Shown: positions 33,797-50,035, counted from the stretch's first letter. The stretch is DNA of 64,000 nt from IMGVR_UViG_3300034073_003340:62001-126000; one strand, 5' to 3'. Numbers and translations: made by a program. The notes: a model not told the origin generated them from the sequence alone.

Positions 33797-34114
33797 TTAT
33801 TGTGCTCCTCCGAAAGTGAGTTTGAAAAGAACGGCGATATCAGGTTTTTCAAAATACCACCGTGAACCATTGCCATTGTGCCAAAAACTACTGCCTTTAT
33901 CCATACACCACGTCTTCATTTGGGAGATGGCAAAACCATCTGTTGGCTTGATATCAACGGTTGTCATCTCAGGCCAAGCTTCGCGGAGTCTTTTACTCCA
34001 ATGCTTGTCACGAGTGCTGATACCAACTGGCGGACAAAATAGAAGGCCCTGTTCTCGCCAGACCTTGATGTAGGCCTGAGTGGCCAGGCTTTGTGCTGTC
34101 TTGAAGTCCGTCAT
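33797..34114 (-). CDS. Hypothetical protein, FKL-motif family
   Basis: TGATG overlap with pth2; ends WYFEKPDIAVLFKLTF. Confidence 0.7.
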   Translation of the reverse strand: MTDFKTAQSLATQAYIKVWREQGLLFCPPVGISTRDKHWSKRLREAWPEMTTVDIKPTDGFAISQMKTWCMDKGSSFWHNGNGSRWYFEKPDIAVLFKLTFGGAQ

Positions 34115-34572
34115 CAGCCGACCACCGAGAATCGCTTGGTGATCGCATGAGCCTGCTCCTTGGTACAAGGACCAATACCAAGCGCAGTCACGATGGGATT
34201 ACCATCGAATGCCGTGCCGGGCATGATGTGGTTCTTGTCAATGATAAGCGAGGTGATCAGGCCAGCTTCCTGTGCGGCTTCATAAGCGCGCATAATTGCG
34301 GCTTCGTTCTTGGCCTTAAGGATGACCTGGGTGCCGATGAAGTCTGGGCCCTGGTAAACGCGCAGGAGCTCAGGATCGCGACGGCTCGCGAGAAGCACAC
34401 AGTTCTTGGCCGCATGACAAGCCTGACTTGCCATCTTGCCTGGAGTCATGTCCAGGTCGCCGCGAATGATGCTGTAGATGCGAAGCTTTTCGGAGGCTGC
34501 TTCGAATGCCTGGTAGTCGTTGTCGTTGTCGTAACGAGCAGCGGCTTCCTACAAGAAAGAATTCGTGATCAT
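34114..34572 (-). CDS. pth2: Peptidyl-tRNA hydrolase, Pth2 family, with in-frame UAG at codon 8 (34551-34549)
   Basis: KLRIYSIIRGDLDMTPGKMASQACHA and TALGIGP Pth2 motifs; the conserved first strand lies upstream of the track ATG 34449; every upstream in-frame ATG/GTG/TTG (SD-backed ATG 34572) precedes a TAG. Confidence 0.85.
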
Positions 34573-35920: not shown

Positions 35921-36739
35921 TCAATCAGCTTCTGGTGGTGTCTTGTTGATATCACCGCGCTGGGCCTGATACCAGTTGTAGACGCAGCGGTCGAGACCAA
36001 TCGCAATCTCGAGGACTAACGCGTCTTTTTCCACAATATCTTTCTTGCCCTGGAAGGTCAGCTTCTGAGGGAAATCAGTCCGAAGGCTGATCGAGCAGAC
36101 TTCCATCCACTTGTCGCCATTCCAAATTTCCACATCCATGGTTCGCTTGCTATAAGCGGGCAGTCGATCACTTTCCACCAGCCGGGTGGGTAGGTGTACC
36201 ATTGCGCCGATCATCTGCTGAACCTTGGGCAACATGGCTTCCTGATAATCCATACCAGAATCAGCAGTGAAGATACACTGGAACTCCTGCTGGTAGAACT
36301 CTTTTAGCCGCATATGCTTGGTGGGCTGGATAATTTCTCGACGAAAGCTTTTACCGGCTTGCCATACGACCAAGGGAGGGAAAACCTTGGGATGAACGTT
36401 ATTCAGTAGATGTTGCGCATAGGCATAGCTACCTGGCGTGGTCTCGGGACGAAGCGCGAGGATGCGTGGTGGAGGGCTAGCCTCACTATCGACCCACTTT
36501 TGATCTTCCTCACTCAATCGAGGATCTTGCTCCCAAATGTCGTTGGCAGTGTAATTGACGTTGAGGAGATCACGCGGGTTGAGCAGTGGAGCCTCGATCT
36601 GGAAAAACTTCCAGCGATCATTGAGGGCCTGAAGTTCTACCTGAATACGAGCGGCAAAGAAATCTCGCATAGTCTCACGAAGCTTGATCTCTTCCTCGTT
36701 CCAAAACACAAGGCCATTGATATTGAAGATGTTCTGCAT
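35921..36739 (-). CDS. Glycyl-tRNA synthetase (alpha2-type)-like catalytic core without anticodon-binding domain
   Basis: LRPETT, QAGKSFRRE..RLKEFYQQEFQ (motif 2), AYSKRTMDVE, EVCSISLRTDF, VLEIAIGLDR (motif 3); ends about 20 aa after motif 3. Confidence 0.85.
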   Translation of the reverse strand: MQNIFNINGLVFWNEEEIKLRETMRDFFAARIQVELQALNDRWKFFQIEAPLLNPRDLLNVNYTANDIWEQDPRLSEEDQKWVDSEASPPPRILALRPETTPGSYAYAQHLLNNVHPKVFPPLVVWQAGKSFRREIIQPTKHMRLKEFYQQEFQCIFTADSGMDYQEAMLPKVQQMIGAMVHLPTRLVESDRLPAYSKRTMDVEIWNGDKWMEVCSISLRTDFPQKLTFQGKKDIVEKDALVLEIAIGLDRCVYNWYQAQRGDINKTPPEAD

Positions 36740-36741
36740 TT

Positions 36742-37113
36742 TTAGTTCAACCTTATATGAGCCGGAAGAGGCAGGAACTCGTCGGTCTTGGGAAATCGAA
36801 TATGGGTGGCGACAGTGTCGCCATTCTCATGAATGATCACACGGAAAGTCAACTCCAACCCTGCATAGGCGAAGTTTCGAGCACAAGCGCCTTCGAGGCC
36901 TAACTCCTCTGCGTCAATTACTCGGTCGTCCTTGGTGCTGTAGACACGAAAGCCGTCCCAGGTCAGAGGAAAACAAGGCTTCTTGGCTCTCTCCTCACGG
37001 CGAGCACGCTCTACACGGATGTTAGCTTCCAAGCGGTCGAGGCATTGGTCATCCATCTTGTCAATGGGTATATCATCATAATTTGCGGTTCCCGTGTGAT
37101 CAATTATACCCAT
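36742..37113 (-). CDS. Hypothetical protein between tRNA-Sup and the GlyRS-like gene
   Basis: GAGGT SD; tightly packed. Confidence 0.65.
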   Translation of the reverse strand: MGIIDHTGTANYDDIPIDKMDDQCLDRLEANIRVERARREERAKKPCFPLTWDGFRVYSTKDDRVIDAEELGLEGACARNFAYAGLELTFRVIIHENGDTVATHIRFPKTDEFLPLPAHIRLN

Positions 37114-37131
37114 GATTTACCTCAAATTCGG

Positions 37132-37204
37132 CCTCCCCGCCGAGATTCGAACTCGGGTCTCGCGATTTTAGAGATCGCTGCTCTACCAACTGAGCTACGG
37201 GAAG
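37132..37204 (-). tRNA. Amber suppressor tRNA, anticodon CUA
   Basis: Canonical cloverleaf: acceptor CTTCCCG/CGGGGAG, D-arm GCTC-AGTTGGTA-GAGC, anticodon arm GCGAT-CT[CTA]AA-ATCGC (anticodon 37171-37169), T-arm CCGAG-TTCGAAT-CTCGG; G73; followed by CCG, not CCA. Confidence 0.93.
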
Positions 37205-37215
37205 ATGTAACCTGT

Positions 37216-37677
37216 TTAGGATTTATTCTCCAGCGCGTCAAGACGCTCCATGATCTCGCGGAGCAATCGAACTTGCTCGTCCGACTGTTTTTTGAGAATT
37301 TCTTGTTCTTCGTGCGTAAAGGCATTGCTGTCAACGATCAAATGTGCTGACATCTTTGCCGTGATAATCGGCACGACCAGAAACACGCAAATAAACATGA
37401 ACGCACCGCCAACCAACTTGGAGATCAAGTGGGTGGGATATAGATCACCATACCCCACCGTCGTAGCAGTGACAGTGGCCCACCAAAAGCTATTGGTGAG
37501 GTCTTTGCCCTCTACGATACTAAAGGTGACCGCAGCGATAGTCATTGTTATAATGAACAACATGACCATGGGAAGGACCTTGTTGGCCATCTTCTGCATG
37601 ATGTTCATTTGAACCATAGGTTGGGCAATAGCAATATCATAGATATCACTACCAACCTTTTCAATTCCCTTACGCAT
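37216..37677 (-). CDS. Potassium channel (2-TM, KcsA-like)
   Basis: [16 protein letters not shown] selectivity filter between two TM helices. Confidence 0.92.
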
Positions 37678-37700: not shown

Positions 37701-38294
37701 TCAGTCGAGTTCGCTATACTTGCTGGCCATGCGGTCCGACATGCGCTGAAGTCCACCGGCAATGGTCTGGTAGACCGAAGCAAACACTCGCTGGAGGAAG
37801 TCACCAACGAAAGTGCCGATGAACGAAAAGGGCCAAAACACCATCCAAGTGGTGATACGACCCTTGTTATAGCGGACCATTCGGTTTACATTGATGTCAA
37901 GTGCCTTGACATCATAGATGCTATTGAAAGCATCACGTACCGCAGCATCAGCTGGCATTTCCTTGAGACCCCGGCTTTCCAGAAAGCGCCAGCGAAGTGT
38001 TTCATAGCGATCGAAAAGCTTGGGCAGAAAGAATAGACGCCACTTGATGAATGCCCAAATGGCAGCAATGCCCACATATGCCAAGGCACCGTATACCACA
38101 TAGAGTGGATTATCCTGGATAAAATCCAGAACAGGTGCGTTGGTAAATGCCACAATAGCGGCAACCGTGATCAAAAGAGTGAGGGTGGCCGATCCGACCT
38201 TTTCCGAGTCGATCTGAGCCGCGAGGATCAGAGTAACAGTGCCGACGATAATCCAAAAGAGGACACCGCCGAACGTGATGAGTTCTGCAATCAT
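37701..38294 (-). CDS. Hypothetical membrane protein
   Basis: Three N-terminal TM segments; [11 protein letters not shown]; ATGA overlap with cysS. Confidence 0.7.
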
Positions 38295-39640
38295 GTTCGT
38301 CTCCATTCGGTGCCGTGAACGCCATCGGCCAGCGTGATCCCCATTTCACTTAACTGCTGACGGATCCTATCAGCTTCTTCATAATCTTTGGCTTTTCGTG
38401 CTTCTTGACGAGCAACCACTAGAGCATCAACCGCTTCCTTGTCAACACCTAGAGTTCTCCATTGATGTGGAGTATGGTTTAACAGTCCAAGAAGTTTGCC
38501 TGATTTGATCAACTTAGCCTTAAGTGGGGCCTTTTCCCTACTAGAATCAAGCTCGCTAGCCAAAGCGTGTAGAGCGGTAATAGCCGCAGGTGTATTGAGA
38601 TCCTGAAAAAGCTTAGAGGTGAATTCCCCGGTCAGGCTAGTATCTTCAGCCCAATTAATGTCGTCCCATCGATAAAGGATGTCATAAACCCCTGACAAGG
38701 ATTTATGAGCCTGCTCCAAAGCCTCCCATGAAAAGTCCATGGGTGAACGGTAATGGGTTCGGAGAAAATAGTATCGAACGGTCTCGGCCGGATACTTCTC
38801 GAATAGATCACTTAGAAGAATCACATTGCCGCGACTCTTGGACATCTTTTCACCGTTTACCGTCAAAAGCCCATTATGGACCCAATAACGAGAAAGTGGT
38901 TTGTCCATAGCACAATGACTTTGCGCGCATTCTGCTTCATGATGAGGGAAACGAAGATCAGCACCGCCCCCATGTATATCAATTGTCTGTTCCTGGAACT
39001 CTTTGGCAATCATCGCCGAGCATTCAATATGCCAGCCGGGTCTGCCGTCACCCCAAGGACTGCTCCACCGTGGCTCTCCAGACTTAGCAGGCTTCCAAAG
39101 GACAAAATCTCTGGGATCCTTTTTCTTTGGATCAACTACCACTCGACCACCGGATCTAAGATCATTATGATTGGCTAGACCTGGATGTGGATTACTGGGC
39201 ACGTGAAAAAAGACTTCACCCTTAGAAACATAGGCATGCTTGCTAATGATCAATCGCTTGATCAAAGTTCGCATTGCTTGAATGGATTCAGTGGCTTTGG
39301 GCTCGACCGTTGGTGGTAGACAATTCAATGCCTTGAGGTCGTTGTGATAGGAAGCAATAGCCGGATCAGTGATTTGACTGATGTCTACCGTCTGCTGCGA
39401 TGCTGCTTCAATGATTTTGTCATCAATGTCAGTTATGTTACGGGCATAGCGGACATGATCTTCGCCATAGATATATCGCAGAACTCGGAATAGCTGATCG
39501 AAAACCAGTGCGGGTCTCGCGTTACCAATATGAGCAGGACCATAGACCGTAGGTCCGCAAACATACATCATGACCTGCCTAGGGTCCCCAGGCGTAAAGG
39601 TCTCAGTCTGTCGAGATTGGCTGTTATAAATTTCCAACAT
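38291..39640 (-). CDS. cysS: Cysteinyl-tRNA synthetase
   Basis: MYVCGPTVY, HIGN, DFVLWK, GRPGWHIECSAM, DIHGGG.DL.FPHHE, KMSKS. Confidence 0.97.
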   Translation of the reverse strand: MLEIYNSQSRQTETFTPGDPRQVMMYVCGPTVYGPAHIGNARPALVFDQLFRVLRYIYGEDHVRYARNITDIDDKIIEAASQQTVDISQITDPAIASYHNDLKALNCLPPTVEPKATESIQAMRTLIKRLIISKHAYVSKGEVFFHVPSNPHPGLANHNDLRSGGRVVVDPKKKDPRDFVLWKPAKSGEPRWSSPWGDGRPGWHIECSAMIAKEFQEQTIDIHGGGADLRFPHHEAECAQSHCAMDKPLSRYWVHNGLLTVNGEKMSKSRGNVILLSDLFEKYPAETVRYYFLRTHYRSPMDFSWEALEQAHKSLSGVYDILYRWDDINWAEDTSLTGEFTSKLFQDLNTPAAITALHALASELDSSREKAPLKAKLIKSGKLLGLLNHTPHQWRTLGVDKEAVDALVVARQEARKAKDYEEADRIRQQLSEMGITLADGVHGTEWRRT

Positions 39641-48142: not shown

Positions 48143-48676
48143 ATGAGCACAATTGGACTATATGCAGGATCCTTTGATCCCATGACACGGGGACATTTGG
48201 ATATCTTGAGCAAAGCAGCTCAGACCTTTGATACAGTCCATGTGGCAGTTGGTCGCAATGCTTCCAAAAAGGGCTTCTTTGATGTAGAAACCCGAATCGT
48301 ACTGATGAAGCAGGCTGTCAATGAATGGGAGAATCCCATTCTCAAACAGGCAGTTGAAATGGGTCGTTTGACGTTTGGTCAATATGAAGGAATCAGTATT
48401 ATCAAATATGCCAACCATATTGGTGCCACTCACATTGTTAGGGGCCTCCGCCAGGCGGGCGACTTCAATGATGAGTTTGCTTTGACAGGTGCCGCTGCCT
48501 ATTTGGATGGCAATATTATCTTTACCCATTTTATTGGTAAGGAAAAATATCTGCATGTTTCAAGTAGCACTGCTCGTGAACTAGCCAGTCTGGATGAAGA
48601 TATCAGCTGGCTAGTCACCCCTAGCGTTGAAAAAGCTCTCGAGGATGAGTTTGCTGCTCGCAGACTCAACAGGTAA
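48143..48676 (+). CDS. coaD: Phosphopantetheine adenylyltransferase
   Basis: YAGSFDPMTRGHLD, IVRGLR..DF..E, VSSS..RE. Confidence 0.92.
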   Translation: MSTIGLYAGSFDPMTRGHLDILSKAAQTFDTVHVAVGRNASKKGFFDVETRIVLMKQAVNEWENPILKQAVEMGRLTFGQYEGISIIKYANHIGATHIVRGLRQAGDFNDEFALTGAAAYLDGNIIFTHFIGKEKYLHVSSSTARELASLDEDISWLVTPSVEKALEDEFAARRLNR

Positions 48677-48865
48677 ATGGAAAGATTTCTCCTCATTTTT
48701 CTAGCTATCTTTTTGCTAGTAACCATCTGCTTGGCTATCCATATTCAGATAGGTCATAAAAGAGATCTCAATTATCCAGCACGTATATTGATATTCTTGT
48801 TGACCCTATTGATGATCTTTACGTTCTATCACGTCAACCAAAGTCTGCTCACGCTGGTTGATTAG
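48677..48865 (+). CDS. Small putative membrane protein
   Basis: Two hydrophobic segments; abuts the coaD stop; overlaps a minus-strand gene. Confidence 0.4.
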   Translation: MERFLLIFLAIFLLVTICLAIHIQIGHKRDLNYPARILIFLLTLLMIFTFYHVNQSLLTLVD

Positions 48866-49075
48866 AGAAATCATCTCCTGCCTCGTAAGGTCACCAAACC
48901 ATTTACGAGGATTACCACAACAAAAATTAGAGCAGGGATGCGGTGTTACCGCTGATCTACGAATCCAACCTGTGCGGTCCTCTGCGTGACCCCACCAACC
49001 AAGAGCGCTCGCGCGACGTTCCGCACGAGCAATAGCGCGCTCACGTTGAGCACGTCTCCAAGACCTATTTCGCAT
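48806..49075 (-). CDS. Arg-rich small protein with C-x2/3-C motif
   Basis: GGAGG SD before MRNRSWRR; TPHPCSNFCCGNPRK. Confidence 0.7.
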   Translation of the reverse strand: MRNRSWRRAQRERAIARAERRASALGWWGHAEDRTGWIRRSAVTPHPCSNFCCGNPRKWFGDLTRQEMISLINQREQTLVDVIERKDHQ

Positions 49076-49162
49076 GTTTACCTCCACACGCCTAGGCCCC
49101 AGCGTTAATTCGCCGGGGTCAGGGCATGTTGGGAGGTCTAAGTTCCTTGATTTCCATATTGT

Positions 49163-50035
49163 CTACTTAGTGGAAATGTCGATTTGAGTCAAGGTAAAGG
49201 GTGGATTTTCCCTTGGATAGCCGCGAGCATTATTGGCGTATATCACGCCCTCGATTTCTCGCATCTGACGATGATGAGTGTGTCCATATATCCAAAGTTT
49301 GATTTTGTTTTTGGAGTCTGCTTGGATTACCTGGTCGAGCGCAGTATTTACATAGCTGGGAGTAAGAGTATTCCAAACAATATCTCCTACCTTCCATTCC
49401 ATGAGATCCGCCCTTGGACTCATGTGAGTGGTAACCACGATAGCATGAATTGATTCGTCTTCACCGGCAATTCTTACTTGTTCGGCAAGATTGATAGCTT
49501 GGGTAGCGGCCAGACTTTCAACCGTAGAACCGTTGAAATCCAAAAAGCGAGAATCGTTGGAATATTGATTCCAAGCCCGCTTGGCAGTGAAATCGCTGAT
49601 TCCTTGGTCTTCATAAGCTCTAAAATTATACCAGCCGGTACTACCAAAGAAAGCCACCCCATCTAGAGTAAAGCTGTTATCGTCCTTTAGATAATGAACA
49701 TTATCCAAGCGACTCAATTGATTGGACAAAAATTCCATACCATGGTCAATCGACATATCATTATCATAATGATCGTGATTGCCTTCAACTACTACCACAT
49801 GCTCATATTCAGCAGATGCTGCTTCAATTACCTGGATAGTAGTGATAAGATTGTTGGATATATCACCAGCAATTACTAAGACCCGACTATCTGGATTCTT
49901 ATATTCTCTCCAATCAATATAAAGAAACAGAGACTCGTAAGGTTCACCTGACCACTTACGACTATTGGGATCATGAAGTCGAGTCTGATTGTGCCAAGCG
50001 TCAACATGAAGGTCAGAGCAGAAATCTATTTTCAT
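49163..50035 (-). CDS. Calcineurin-like metallophosphoesterase; TAG stop
   Basis: SDLH, AGD, GNHD, TH, GHTH motifs. Confidence 0.92.
   Translation of the reverse strand: MKIDFCSDLHVDAWHNQTRLHDPNSRKWSGEPYESLFLYIDWREYKNPDSRVLVIAGDISNNLITTIQVIEAASAEYEHVVVVEGNHDHYDNDMSIDHGMEFLSNQLSRLDNVHYLKDDNSFTLDGVAFFGSTGWYNFRAYEDQGISDFTAKRAWNQYSNDSRFLDFNGSTVESLAATQAINLAEQVRIAGEDESIHAIVVTTHMSPRADLMEWKVGDIVWNTLTPSYVNTALDQVIQADSKNKIKLWIYGHTHHRQMREIEGVIYANNARGYPRENPPFTLTQIDISTK

What the first reader, a model, noticed from the sequence alone, without database searches (positions are those of the whole stretch)
37129..37204. Amber suppressor tRNA with an atypical acceptor stem
Seen: anticodon loop CU-CUA-AA; acceptor pairs C1-G72, U2-A71, U3.G70; discriminator G73; 5-nt variable loop; 3' end CCG, so CCA must be added. 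Established: this matches neither bacterial tRNA-Gly identity (G1-C72, C2-G71, U73) nor the tRNA-Pyl architecture. Inference: the stem may avoid host synthetases and be read by the neighbouring phage enzyme.
Basis: partly seen in the sequence, partly recalled or inferred. Interest (0 to 1): 0.8.

Follow-up and report, generated by a model that had tools for sequence, protein, structure and literature searches.

The report
Amber suppressor tRNA in jumbo phage
This is a real, conserved stop-codon-reading (UAG) tRNA gene in a 436-kb soil or subsurface phage, a kind already known from giant phages, and its odd first base pair and its supposed partnership with the neighbouring enzyme are not backed by comparison with relatives.

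Summary
Window 37132-37204 (- strand) is a canonical cloverleaf tRNA with anticodon CUA, C1-G72/U2-A71/U3.G70, discriminator G73, a 5-nt variable loop and no encoded CCA (Rfam tRNA 63 bits, E 2.5e-11).

It is functional. Nine aligned orthologues show compensatory changes at 15 of 21 pairs and no broken pair.

The "atypical" C1-G72 pair is a lineage variant: 2 of 13 orthologues have it and 11 have G1-C72. Only G73, the anticodon loop and (in the nine aligned) the D stem are constant.

The genome is a complete 435,856-bp jumbo phage with 59 tRNAs, using the standard code:
- TAG ends 7.5% of genes.
- No convincing in-frame TAG was found.
- No release-factor gene was found.

The neighbouring enzyme is a 272-aa glycyl-tRNA-synthetase-like catalytic core with no anticodon-binding domain. 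Its link to the tRNA is one inherited collinear gene block. Elsewhere the enzyme occurs without CUA tRNAs, often beside ordinary tRNA-Gly, and 9 of 9 other CUA-bearing jumbo phages lack it.

Best reading: an ordinary phage amber suppressor, with the charging enzyme and the inserted amino acid unresolved. A dedicated enzyme-tRNA pair is possible but unlikely (about 0.1).

The parts
37132..37204 (-). Mature tRNA body, positions 1-73. Anticodon CUA lies at 37169-37171. The 5' acceptor strand is 37198-37204, the 3' acceptor strand is 37133-37139, and discriminator G73 is at 37132.
   Evidence: ARAGORN. Rfam tRNA at 63.1 bits. Sequence read. Covariation in 9 orthologues.
37129..37131 (-). 3' trailer CCG. 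CCA is not encoded and must be added after trimming.
   Evidence: Sequence. Among orthologues some encode CCA and some do not. The phage encodes a PolyA_pol/CCA-adding family enzyme at genome 380474-380839.
35921..36739 (-). 272-aa class IIa aminoacyl-tRNA-synthetase catalytic core. It is closest to dimeric (alpha2) GlyRS and has no anticodon-binding domain.
   Evidence: Pfam tRNA-synt_2b. PDB sequence hits to GlyRS at E 3e-8, and 1e-12 with a family profile. NCBIfam glycine--tRNA ligase at 55 bits, far below the 312-bit cut-off. AlphaFold2 model pLDDT 86 with best folds GlyRS and ProRS cores. Invariant motifs in 28 homologues.
36742..37113 (-). 123-aa ORF of unknown function between the tRNA and the enzyme. 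It is present in only some relatives.
   Evidence: No Pfam or PHROG hit. Atlas model is poor, pLDDT 0.46. tblastn finds it in L009-L011 but not in L008 or L012-L014.
37216..37677 (-). 153-aa potassium-channel-like gene. Its stop lies 11 nt upstream of the tRNA's 5' end.
   Evidence: Pfam Ion_trans_2 at E 1.8e-11. Conserved in most relatives.
37701..38306 (-). 201-aa conserved phage protein of unknown function.
   Evidence: No family hit. Atlas cluster of 1,792 mostly viral members. Conserved in all relatives.
38291..39640 (-). Full-length cysteinyl-tRNA synthetase at the head of the collinear translation block.
   Evidence: Pfam tRNA-synt_1e at E 6e-110. NCBIfam cysS at 460 bits against a cut-off of 340.
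34114..34449 (-). Pth2-type peptidyl-tRNA hydrolase, in the same block and on the same strand.
   Evidence: Pfam PTH2 at E 1.7e-17. Syntenic in all relatives.

Best explanation
The element is a functional phage-encoded amber (UAG) suppressor tRNA of the kind already seen in many jumbo phages.

**Shown**
- It has a canonical cloverleaf with a CUA anticodon in a standard 7-nt loop.
- It has been kept under purifying selection across a clade of roughly 390-470-kb phages.
- It sits inside a tightly packed same-strand block of translation and tRNA-related genes: CysRS, a 201-aa ORF, a K+ channel, the tRNA, a 123-aa ORF, the GlyRS-like core, a phosphatase and Pth2.

**Inferred**
- It is co-transcribed with its neighbours. 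The gaps are 11 nt upstream and 16 nt downstream, and it has no promoter or terminator of its own.
- It is cut out by RNase P and 3' trimming, and receives CCA from the host or from the phage's own CCA-adding enzyme.
- It is aminoacylated, most probably by an enzyme that tolerates the CUA anticodon and accepts G73.
- It then competes with release factor 1 at UAG.

**Consequence.** The phage uses the standard code, and TAG is its rarest stop. The practical effect would be low-level read-through, a median of 11 extra codons on 43 phage genes plus host genes. This is the 'suppressor acquired, code not yet changed' state described for relatives of recoded phages.

**Unresolved.** The inserted amino acid is not known.
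- The body is most like tRNA-Lys, Met or Thr.
- G73 with C34 and A36 fits TrpRS rules.
- G73 with U35 fits GlnRS, AsnRS or AspRS rules.
- U35 fits LysRS rules.

C1-G72 in this copy is a neutral or lineage-specific flip, not the key to its identity.
For: **The tRNA is real and under selection.**
- tRNA calls.
- 15 of 21 pairs compensatory and none broken in nine aligned orthologues. The anticodon loop and the D stem are invariant there.
- G73 is invariant in all 13 orthologues.

**The genome uses the standard code.**
- It is a complete jumbo phage with direct terminal repeats.
- Standard-code ORFs cover 82-84% of it.
- TAG ends 43 of 573 predicted genes.
- Reading TAG as sense gains no more coverage than doing the same with TGA or TAA.
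- All same-frame TAG junctions with coding signal on both sides resolve into antisense shadow frames or separate complete genes.
- No release factor is encoded.
- A CCA-adding-type enzyme is encoded.

**CUA tRNAs are common in phages.**
Of 67 distinct tRNAs, 26 have G73 and 9 have C1-G72, 7 of those with G73.

**Literature.**
- Jumbo phage XacN1 has two CUA suppressors and no identifiable target (PMC5852040).
- Standard-code phages acquire suppressor tRNAs before recoding, and host GlnRS or TrpRS are thought to charge them (bioRxiv 10.1101/2021.08.26.457843).
Against: - No expression or charging data exist. Only DNA runs hold this sequence.
- No target gene for suppression was found, so the selective benefit is unexplained.
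- The tRNA sits alone, about 190 kb from the phage's main tRNA array, beside an unusual synthetase-like enzyme. That placement could reflect a dedicated function.
- G73 with a variable acceptor stem matches no single textbook identity set. The identity rules used here come from E. coli and B. subtilis and are my own knowledge. The host is unknown.
Confidence: 0.7

Rival explanations
1. Dedicated pair. The 272-aa GlyRS-like core has no anticodon-binding domain and so ignores the anticodon. It specifically charges this G73 tRNA-CUA with glycine or another small amino acid, giving the phage a private UAG-decoding pair that host synthetases do not touch.
For: - The tRNA lies upstream of the enzyme on the same strand in every member of the clade examined, 13 loci with enzyme identity down to about 58%. 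This holds even though the ORFs between them come and go.
- The enzyme keeps class II motifs 1-3 and the three glutamates equivalent to the GlyRS glycine pocket (E99, E152, E244 invariant). The mapping to human GlyRS residues E245, E296 and E522 is from my own knowledge.
- There is no anticodon-binding domain.
- The tRNA fails bacterial tRNA-Gly identity, and G73 is invariant.
- A suppressor-tRNA plus synthetase 'code-change module' has a precedent in Jade phages.
Against: - The adjacency is one collinear block. The CUA-adjacent enzymes form a single clade (100/99 support) plus Phosso, so this amounts to one or two independent events.
- The enzyme family (more than 1,800 clusters) occurs in Caulobacter, Brevundimonas, Xanthomonas and huge uncultured phages with no adjacent CUA tRNA.
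- Four of nine such genomes show no CUA tRNA at all by pattern search.
- In six of twelve loci where the enzyme lies beside other tRNA genes, it sits within about 700 bp of an otherwise canonical U73 tRNA-Gly(UCC).
- 0 of 9 other complete CUA-bearing jumbo phages has the enzyme, with a positive control of 5 of 5. Similar tRNAs are therefore charged by something else.
- Apart from G73, no acceptor-stem base is conserved for the enzyme to read.
Confidence: 0.12
2. Non-decoding role. The tRNA is not used by the ribosome. It acts as a decoy or replacement against host anticodon nucleases, or as an aminoacyl donor for a phage transferase in the neighbouring block (ATP-grasp, RNA ligase, phosphatase, Pth2).
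For: - No suppression target was found.
- The block contains tRNA-repair-type genes. The RNA ligase homologue and the phosphatase are annotated in Phosso, an R2K ATP-grasp and Pth2 are present, and synteny is conserved.
- The body resembles tRNA-Lys, a frequent nuclease target (target status is from my own knowledge).
Against: - The anticodon loop CUCUAAA is invariant in the nine aligned orthologues and CUA is retained in all 13. This argues for selection on decoding UAG itself.
- No aminoacyl-tRNA transferase family was detected in the neighbours.
- All elements needed for normal ribosomal use (D, T and acceptor features) are canonical.
Confidence: 0.08
3. Decaying or chance tRNA-like sequence with no function.
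For: - CCA is missing.
- It has an unusual C1-G72 pair and a U3.G70 wobble.
- The tRNA is isolated from the main array.
Against: - It scores 63 bits against the tRNA model.
- Nine orthologues show 15 compensatory pairs and no broken pair.
- Many other tRNAs in this phage also lack an encoded CCA.
Confidence: 0.02

Closest known systems
CUA suppressor tRNAs of standard-code jumbo phages (for example Xanthomonas phage XacN1, PMC5852040)
   Same: - A jumbo phage with dozens of tRNAs and the standard code.
- CUA tRNAs are present, two of them in both XacN1 and this genome.
- In-silico read-through reveals no target gene (one search compared).
   Different: - Here the tRNA sits alone in a synthetase and tRNA-repair block, not in the tRNA array or the terminal repeats.
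- This copy has C1-G72 and G73.
Suppressor tRNAs and 'code-change modules' of recoded phages (Borges et al., bioRxiv 10.1101/2021.08.26.457843)
   Same: - A suppressor tRNA next to a synthetase gene.
- The stop codon that the suppressor reads is rare.
- This matches the proposed pre-recoding stage.
   Different: - The module described there is a TGA suppressor with TrpRS and RF1 next to a recoded lysis cassette.
- Here there is no release factor and no recoded gene.
- The synthetase is a GlyRS-like core, not one predicted to serve a Gln or Trp suppressor.
E. coli su+7 (supU), the tRNA-Trp-derived amber suppressor (my own knowledge; alluded to)
   Same: - G73.
- Anticodon loop CUCUAAA, one change from the CUCCAAA loop of tRNA-Trp.
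- A class I tRNA with a 5-nt variable loop.
   Different: - su+7 has A1-U72 and a tRNA-Trp body.
- This tRNA's body is nearer to Lys, Met or Thr tRNAs.
- The phage's own tRNA-Trp genes are only about 63% identical.
tRNA-Pyl with PylRS
   Same: - CUA anticodon and G73.
- A neighbouring class II catalytic core of about 270 aa without an anticodon-binding domain, plus a small adjacent ORF. This is superficially like the split PylSc and PylSn.
   Different: - The tRNA has none of the Pyl architecture.
- The enzyme matches GlyRS, not PylS.
- The small ORF is not conserved.
- No pylBCD genes were seen in the block.
Dimeric (alpha2) glycyl-tRNA synthetase with tRNA-Gly
   Same: The neighbouring enzyme shares the catalytic fold, motifs 1-3 and the acidic glycine pocket residues.
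   Different: - The enzyme lacks the anticodon-binding domain and insertion domains.
- It scores far below the GlyRS equivalog cut-off.
- The tRNA lacks C35, C36, U73 or A73, and the C2-G71 and G3-C70 pairs.

Membership tests
tRNA (Rfam RF00005) | Cloverleaf matching the covariance model above the gathering score | tested here: met
   63.1 bits against a gathering score of 29, over model positions 1-71. ARAGORN agrees.
tRNA (Rfam RF00005) | Stems maintained by compensatory substitutions in orthologues | tested here: met
   15 of 21 pairs have double changes, and there are 0 broken pairs in 9 sequences.
Amber suppressor tRNA | Anticodon CUA in a 7-nt loop with U33 and a purine at position 37 | tested here: met
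   The loop is C32 U33 C34 U35 A36 A37 A38. It is invariant in the nine aligned orthologues, and CUA is kept in all 13.
Amber suppressor tRNA | The tRNA is aminoacylated and reads UAG on the ribosome | not testable with these tools
   Only DNA sequencing runs hold the locus.
tRNA-Pyl | 6-bp anticodon stem, 3-nt variable loop, short D loop without G18 G19, and one base between the acceptor and D stems | tested here: not met
   It has a 5-bp anticodon stem, a 5-nt variable loop, an 8-nt D loop with GG, and two bases (U8, A9) between the stems. ARAGORN's 'Pyl' label only reflects the anticodon.
Bacterial tRNA-Gly | G1-C72, C2-G71, G3-C70, U73, C35 and C36 (identity rules from my own knowledge) | tested here: not met
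   This tRNA has C1-G72, U2-A71, U3.G70, G73, U35 and A36. The phage's own tRNA-Gly genes carry G1-C72, C2-G71, G3 and U73.
Stop-codon-recoded phage (TAG as a sense codon, code 15) | In-frame TAG codons inside conserved genes, and gene fragmentation under the standard code | tested here: not met
   Standard-code ORF coverage is 82-84%. Treating TAG as sense gives no special gain. The candidates resolve into antisense shadow frames or separate complete genes.
Phage code-change module (suppressor tRNA, synthetase and release factor) | A release factor gene accompanies the suppressor | tested here: not met
   There is no PCRF-domain match in the complete genome. The bacterial controls were positive.
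Alpha2 glycyl-tRNA synthetase (for the neighbouring enzyme) | Class II motifs 1-3 and the acidic glycine-binding residues | tested here: met
   RPET, FRRE...EFYQQEFQ and LEIAIGLDR are invariant in 28 homologues. They align to the GlyRS motifs.
Alpha2 glycyl-tRNA synthetase (for the neighbouring enzyme) | C-terminal anticodon-binding domain, and a score above the equivalog cut-off | tested here: not met
   The protein ends right after motif 3. NCBIfam scores are 55 bits against 312 and 32 bits against 243.
Dedicated (orthogonal) synthetase-tRNA pair | Enzyme and tRNA co-occur across independent lineages | tested here: not met
   - The adjacency is one clade plus Phosso.
- The enzyme occurs without a CUA tRNA in 4 of 9 genomes.
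- CUA tRNAs occur without the enzyme in 9 of 9 genomes.
Dedicated (orthogonal) synthetase-tRNA pair | The enzyme charges this tRNA and host enzymes do not | not testable with these tools
   This needs in vitro aminoacylation.

The most novel reading that the evidence does not exclude
The invariant-G73 tRNA-CUA and the anticodon-blind, 272-aa GlyRS-like core are a natural minimal synthetase-suppressor pair. They would let this clade of jumbo phages insert glycine, or another small residue, at UAG independently of the host.
Probability: 0.1. Interest if true: 0.8.

Novelty: new member of a known kind. Interest (0 to 1): 0.35.

Why it matters
Amber suppressor tRNAs in phages that still use the standard code are thought to be the first step toward stop-codon reassignment, but what they do before recoding is unknown. 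This locus is a clean, conserved example: 13 orthologues, and a cultured relative, Sinorhizobium phage Phosso. The question could be tested there at the bench.

The more unusual object is the neighbour. A large phage-specific family of about 250-aa GlyRS-like cores without any anticodon-binding domain would be of interest as a natural minimal class II synthetase, whatever its substrate turns out to be.

Tried and rejected
**1. Genome-wide or local TAG recoding.**
- I compared ORF sets under four stop-codon schemes.
- I listed all same-frame TAG junctions and scored them with a dicodon coding model in six frames.
- I ran the surviving pieces through Pfam and PHROGs.
- All were antisense shadow frames or complete neighbouring genes.

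**2. Backup stops after TAG.** Extension lengths after TAG (median 11 codons) do not differ from those after TAA or TGA.

**3. A split anticodon-binding or PylSn-like domain in the flanking 123-aa and 201-aa ORFs.** There were no Pfam or PHROG hits, and the Atlas gave nothing informative. The 123-aa ORF is missing in several relatives.

**4. Isotype assignment by similarity.**
- The nearest phage tRNAs are Arg-UCU (73%), Lys-UUU (70%) and Thr (70%).
- With the anticodon and acceptor stem masked, the neighbours are mostly Lys, Met and Thr.
- This is too generic to name the amino acid. tRNAscan-SE isotype models are not available here.

**5. Promoter and terminator scan.** Nothing exceeded the shuffled controls.

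**6. RNA evidence.** No RNA run was shown to hold the locus, although that search was not RNA-specific.

**7. First viral pattern search.** It returned nothing because I mis-spaced the pattern. I corrected it.

**8. Literature search for Phosso.** No paper was found.

Full report
**1. The observation**

The window holds exactly one tRNA call, at 37130-37204 on the - strand with anticodon CUA. Rfam's tRNA model matches 37132-37204 end to end at 63.1 bits, E 2.5e-11.

Read on the - strand, the molecule has these features:
- Acceptor pairs C1-G72, U2-A71, U3.G70, C4-G69, C5-G68, C6-G67 and G7-C66.
- U8 and A9, then a 4-bp D stem with an AGUUGGUA loop.
- A 5-bp anticodon stem and the loop C-U-CUA-A-A, with the anticodon at 37169-37171.
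- A 5-nt variable loop and a canonical T arm.
- Discriminator G73, followed by CCG.

**2. Where it lies**

The window is bases 62001-126000 of a single 435,856-bp contig with direct terminal repeats, rated 100% complete. It is a jumbo phage of 46% G+C. ARAGORN finds 59 tRNA genes in it.

The sequence comes from subsurface and soil metagenomes and recurs in part in wastewater and freshwater assemblies. Only DNA runs hold it. The only named relative in the phage collection is Sinorhizobium phage Phosso, 469 kb.

The tRNA is far from the main tRNA array at 292-326 kb. It sits in a tightly packed, same-strand block. In transcription order the block reads:
- CysRS (38291-39640)
- a 201-aa ORF
- a K+-channel-like gene (37216-37677)
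- the tRNA
- a 123-aa ORF
- a 272-aa class II synthetase core (35921-36739)
- a dual-specificity-phosphatase-like gene
- further downstream, a Pth2 peptidyl-tRNA hydrolase

Upstream of CysRS lie an R2K ATP-grasp gene and a homologue of Phosso's annotated RNA ligase.

The gaps around the tRNA are 11 nt and 16 nt, and no promoter or terminator stands out from the shuffled controls. Co-transcription followed by excision is therefore the natural inference.

**3. Is it a working gene?**

I collected orthologues from Phosso, from seven IMG/VR contigs and from four further assemblies. Nine of them, aligned, fold into the same cloverleaf. Of 21 pairs, 15 show compensatory double changes and none is broken.

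In those nine the four D-stem pairs and the whole anticodon loop are invariant. G73 and the CUA anticodon are kept in all 13. This rules out a pseudogene or a chance match.

**4. The "atypical acceptor stem"**

C1-G72 is present only in this window and in Phosso. The other 11 orthologues have G1-C72, and in the nine aligned copies pairs 2-71 and 3-70 take four different forms each.

Comparison with the orthologue at locus L011, which has the same 5' leader, shows simple paired substitutions at 1-72 and 2-71 and an A-to-G change at position 70. The stem sequence is therefore not a conserved identity signal. G73 may be one.

These features are also not unique among phage CUA tRNAs:
- Of 67 distinct CUA tRNAs, 26 have G73, 23 have A73 and 13 have U73.
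- Nine have C1-G72, and seven of those also have G73.

**5. Does the phage need a UAG decoder?**

No sign of that was found.
- Standard-code ORFs of at least 100 aa already cover 82% of the genome. Making TAG a sense codon raises coverage no more than doing the same for TGA or TAA.
- With a dicodon coding model, 573 genes are predicted: 286 end in TAA, 244 in TGA and 43 in TAG, which is 7.5%.
- Of 122 same-frame TAG junctions with substantial ORF pieces on both sides, 31 had positive coding scores on both sides.
- Six-frame scoring of the 17 most suspicious showed all but two to be shadows of genes on the opposite strand or to have a non-coding downstream piece. Two more of the 31 had a start codon within five codons of the TAG.
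- I then tested three of these four, leaving out the junction at genome 193761, whose start lies one codon after the TAG. The downstream piece was a complete domain or family match in two and had a start five codons after the TAG in the third.
- Extensions after TAG stops are no shorter than after other stops.
- The phage has no release-factor gene.
- It does encode a CCA-adding-type nucleotidyltransferase, which fits the missing CCA.

**6. The neighbouring enzyme**

The 272-aa protein is a class IIa catalytic core.
- Its best matches among solved structures, by sequence, are dimeric GlyRS. E is 3e-8 for the single sequence and 1e-12 with a family profile.
- The best NCBIfam hits are glycine--tRNA ligase models, but far under their cut-offs.
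- A confident AlphaFold2 model (pLDDT 86) matches GlyRS and ProRS cores and has nothing after motif 3.
- In 28 homologues the segments RPET, FRRE...KEFYQQEFQ and LEIAIGLDR are invariant.
- By my own mapping to GlyRS, these include the motif 2 arginine and the three glutamates of the glycine pocket. The serine that follows the third glutamate in GlyRS is alanine here.

So it is probably an active adenylate-forming enzyme for glycine or a similarly small amino acid, and it cannot read an anticodon by the usual domain. Phosso's record calls the orthologue "serine-tRNA synthetase", which my results do not support.

**7. Is the tRNA its substrate?**

For:
- The tRNA precedes the enzyme on the same strand in all 13 loci of this clade, although the ORFs between them differ.
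- An anticodon-blind enzyme and a tRNA that fails tRNA-Gly identity would make a tidy private pair.

Against:
- (a) The whole block from CysRS to Pth2 is collinear in all these genomes. In a tree of the enzyme, eight CUA-adjacent sequences, including this window's, form one clade (100/99 support), with Phosso unresolved nearby. The linkage therefore counts as one or two evolutionary events.
- (b) The enzyme family is large, 1,844 hits at E of 0.001 or better. It occurs in Caulobacter, Brevundimonas and Xanthomonas jumbo phages and in 630-kb uncultured phages with no CUA tRNA nearby.
- (c) Of nine such genomes, five have a CUA tRNA elsewhere, tens to hundreds of kilobases away. Four show none by pattern search.
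- (d) Where the enzyme lies beside other tRNA genes, a canonical U73 tRNA-Gly(UCC) sits within about 700 bp in six of twelve loci. This hints that ordinary tRNA-Gly is the family's substrate.
- (e) None of nine other complete jumbo phages carrying CUA tRNAs encodes the enzyme. Four of them have G73 and two of those have C1-G72. The same search found the enzyme in five of five positive controls.

Phyletic patterns therefore do not support an obligate pair. Only biochemistry can exclude one.

**8. Which amino acid?**

This is unresolved.
- The phage's own tRNAs follow bacterial identity rules. Among its class I tRNAs, G73 occurs in Trp, Asn, Asp and Arg-UCU.
- The tRNA body is closest to Arg-UCU, Lys-UUU and Thr.
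- With the anticodon and acceptor stem masked, it is closest to Lys, Met and Thr tRNAs from the phage loci I collected.
- By textbook rules (my own knowledge), amber suppressors are commonly taken by GlnRS or LysRS through U35, and G73 with C34 and A36 suits TrpRS.
- Besides CysRS and the GlyRS-like core, the phage encodes a bacterial-type GluRS, a ThrRS lacking its N-terminal part, and a HisRS fragment. It encodes no Trp/Tyr-type (class Ib) or Lys/Asp/Asn-type (class IIb) synthetase.

**9. Comparison with what is known**

- Jumbo phage XacN1 carries two CUA suppressors. Its authors found no target by in-silico read-through (PMC5852040).
- Agrobacterium phage Atu_ph07 carries a UCA suppressor (PMC6102473).
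- Borges et al. describe suppressor acquisition by standard-code phages as a step toward recoding. They also describe a suppressor tRNA, TrpRS and RF1 module, and they suspect host GlnRS or TrpRS as the charging enzymes.
- A 2026 survey reports suppressor tRNAs in 61% of the jumbo phage genomes that use alternative genetic codes (PMC13037316).

This locus is another member of that class. Its particular features are its position in a synthetase and tRNA-repair block and its C1-G72 variant.

**10. Verdict**

It is unsupported on the claim that the acceptor stem is a private handle for the neighbouring enzyme.

The element is a new member of a known kind, of moderate-to-low interest. The neighbouring minimal GlyRS-like family is the more intriguing lead.

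Noticed in passing
window 35921-36739 (-); homologues P0001-P0120; loci L002-L038: A large phage-specific family of about 245-300-aa GlyRS-like class II cores without an anticodon-binding domain, with 1,844 hits at E of 0.001 or better. In public records it is annotated variously as 'hypothetical', 'serine-tRNA synthetase' or 'RNA synthetase class II'. Where it lies among tRNA genes, it often sits beside canonical tRNA-Gly(UCC).
   Followed up: partly
genome 293258-293333 (-), outside the window (locus L042): A second CUA tRNA in the same phage. It has G1-C72, A73, an encoded CCA and a G.G mismatch in the anticodon stem. Many other jumbo-phage contigs also carry two CUA tRNAs with different discriminators, G73 plus A73 or U73. 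This suggests two suppressors with different identities.
   Followed up: partly
window 37216-37677 (-): A 153-aa potassium-channel-like gene (Ion_trans_2) ends 11 nt before the tRNA. It is conserved at that position in most relatives.
   Followed up: no
genome 213662-214930, 305847-307043 and 319008-319460 (loci L144-L146); window 38291-39640: The phage encodes a bacterial-type GluRS (422 aa), a ThrRS lacking the N-terminal editing region (398 aa), a 150-aa HisRS fragment and a full-length CysRS.
   Followed up: partly
window 34114-34449 (-): A Pth2-type (archaeal/eukaryotic-type) peptidyl-tRNA hydrolase. It is 85-93% identical in the close relatives L008-L013 and 73% in Phosso, which makes it the best-conserved gene of the block.
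   Followed up: no
window 48560-50035 (-), genome 110560-112035: One reading frame runs 1,476 nt with six TAG codons and no TAA or TGA. It contains a 290-aa and a 93-aa predicted gene, both ending in TAG. The stretch just after the first TAG scored as non-coding, so I treated them as separate genes.
   Followed up: partly
genome 336774-338201 (-), locus L040: An ADP-ribosylglycohydrolase gene (301 aa) and a P-loop kinase gene (173-codon piece, with a start 12 codons in) lie in the same frame, separated by a single TAG. Each matches a complete domain, so read-through fusion is possible but not indicated.
   Followed up: partly
genome 318794-318870 (-): A tRNA-Asp(GUC) call with C1-G72, G73 and an odd, G+C-rich D arm. 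This is another phage tRNA with the unusual first pair.
   Followed up: no
genome 292007-292099 (-): A 93-nt tRNA-Ile(UAU) call with a long insertion after the anticodon arm. It may be an intron or an oversized variable region.
   Followed up: no
locus L149, 2671-2747 and 3033-3108: In one relative, two CUA tRNAs lie between the K+ channel gene and the GlyRS-like gene. One has A73 and the other G73.
   Followed up: no
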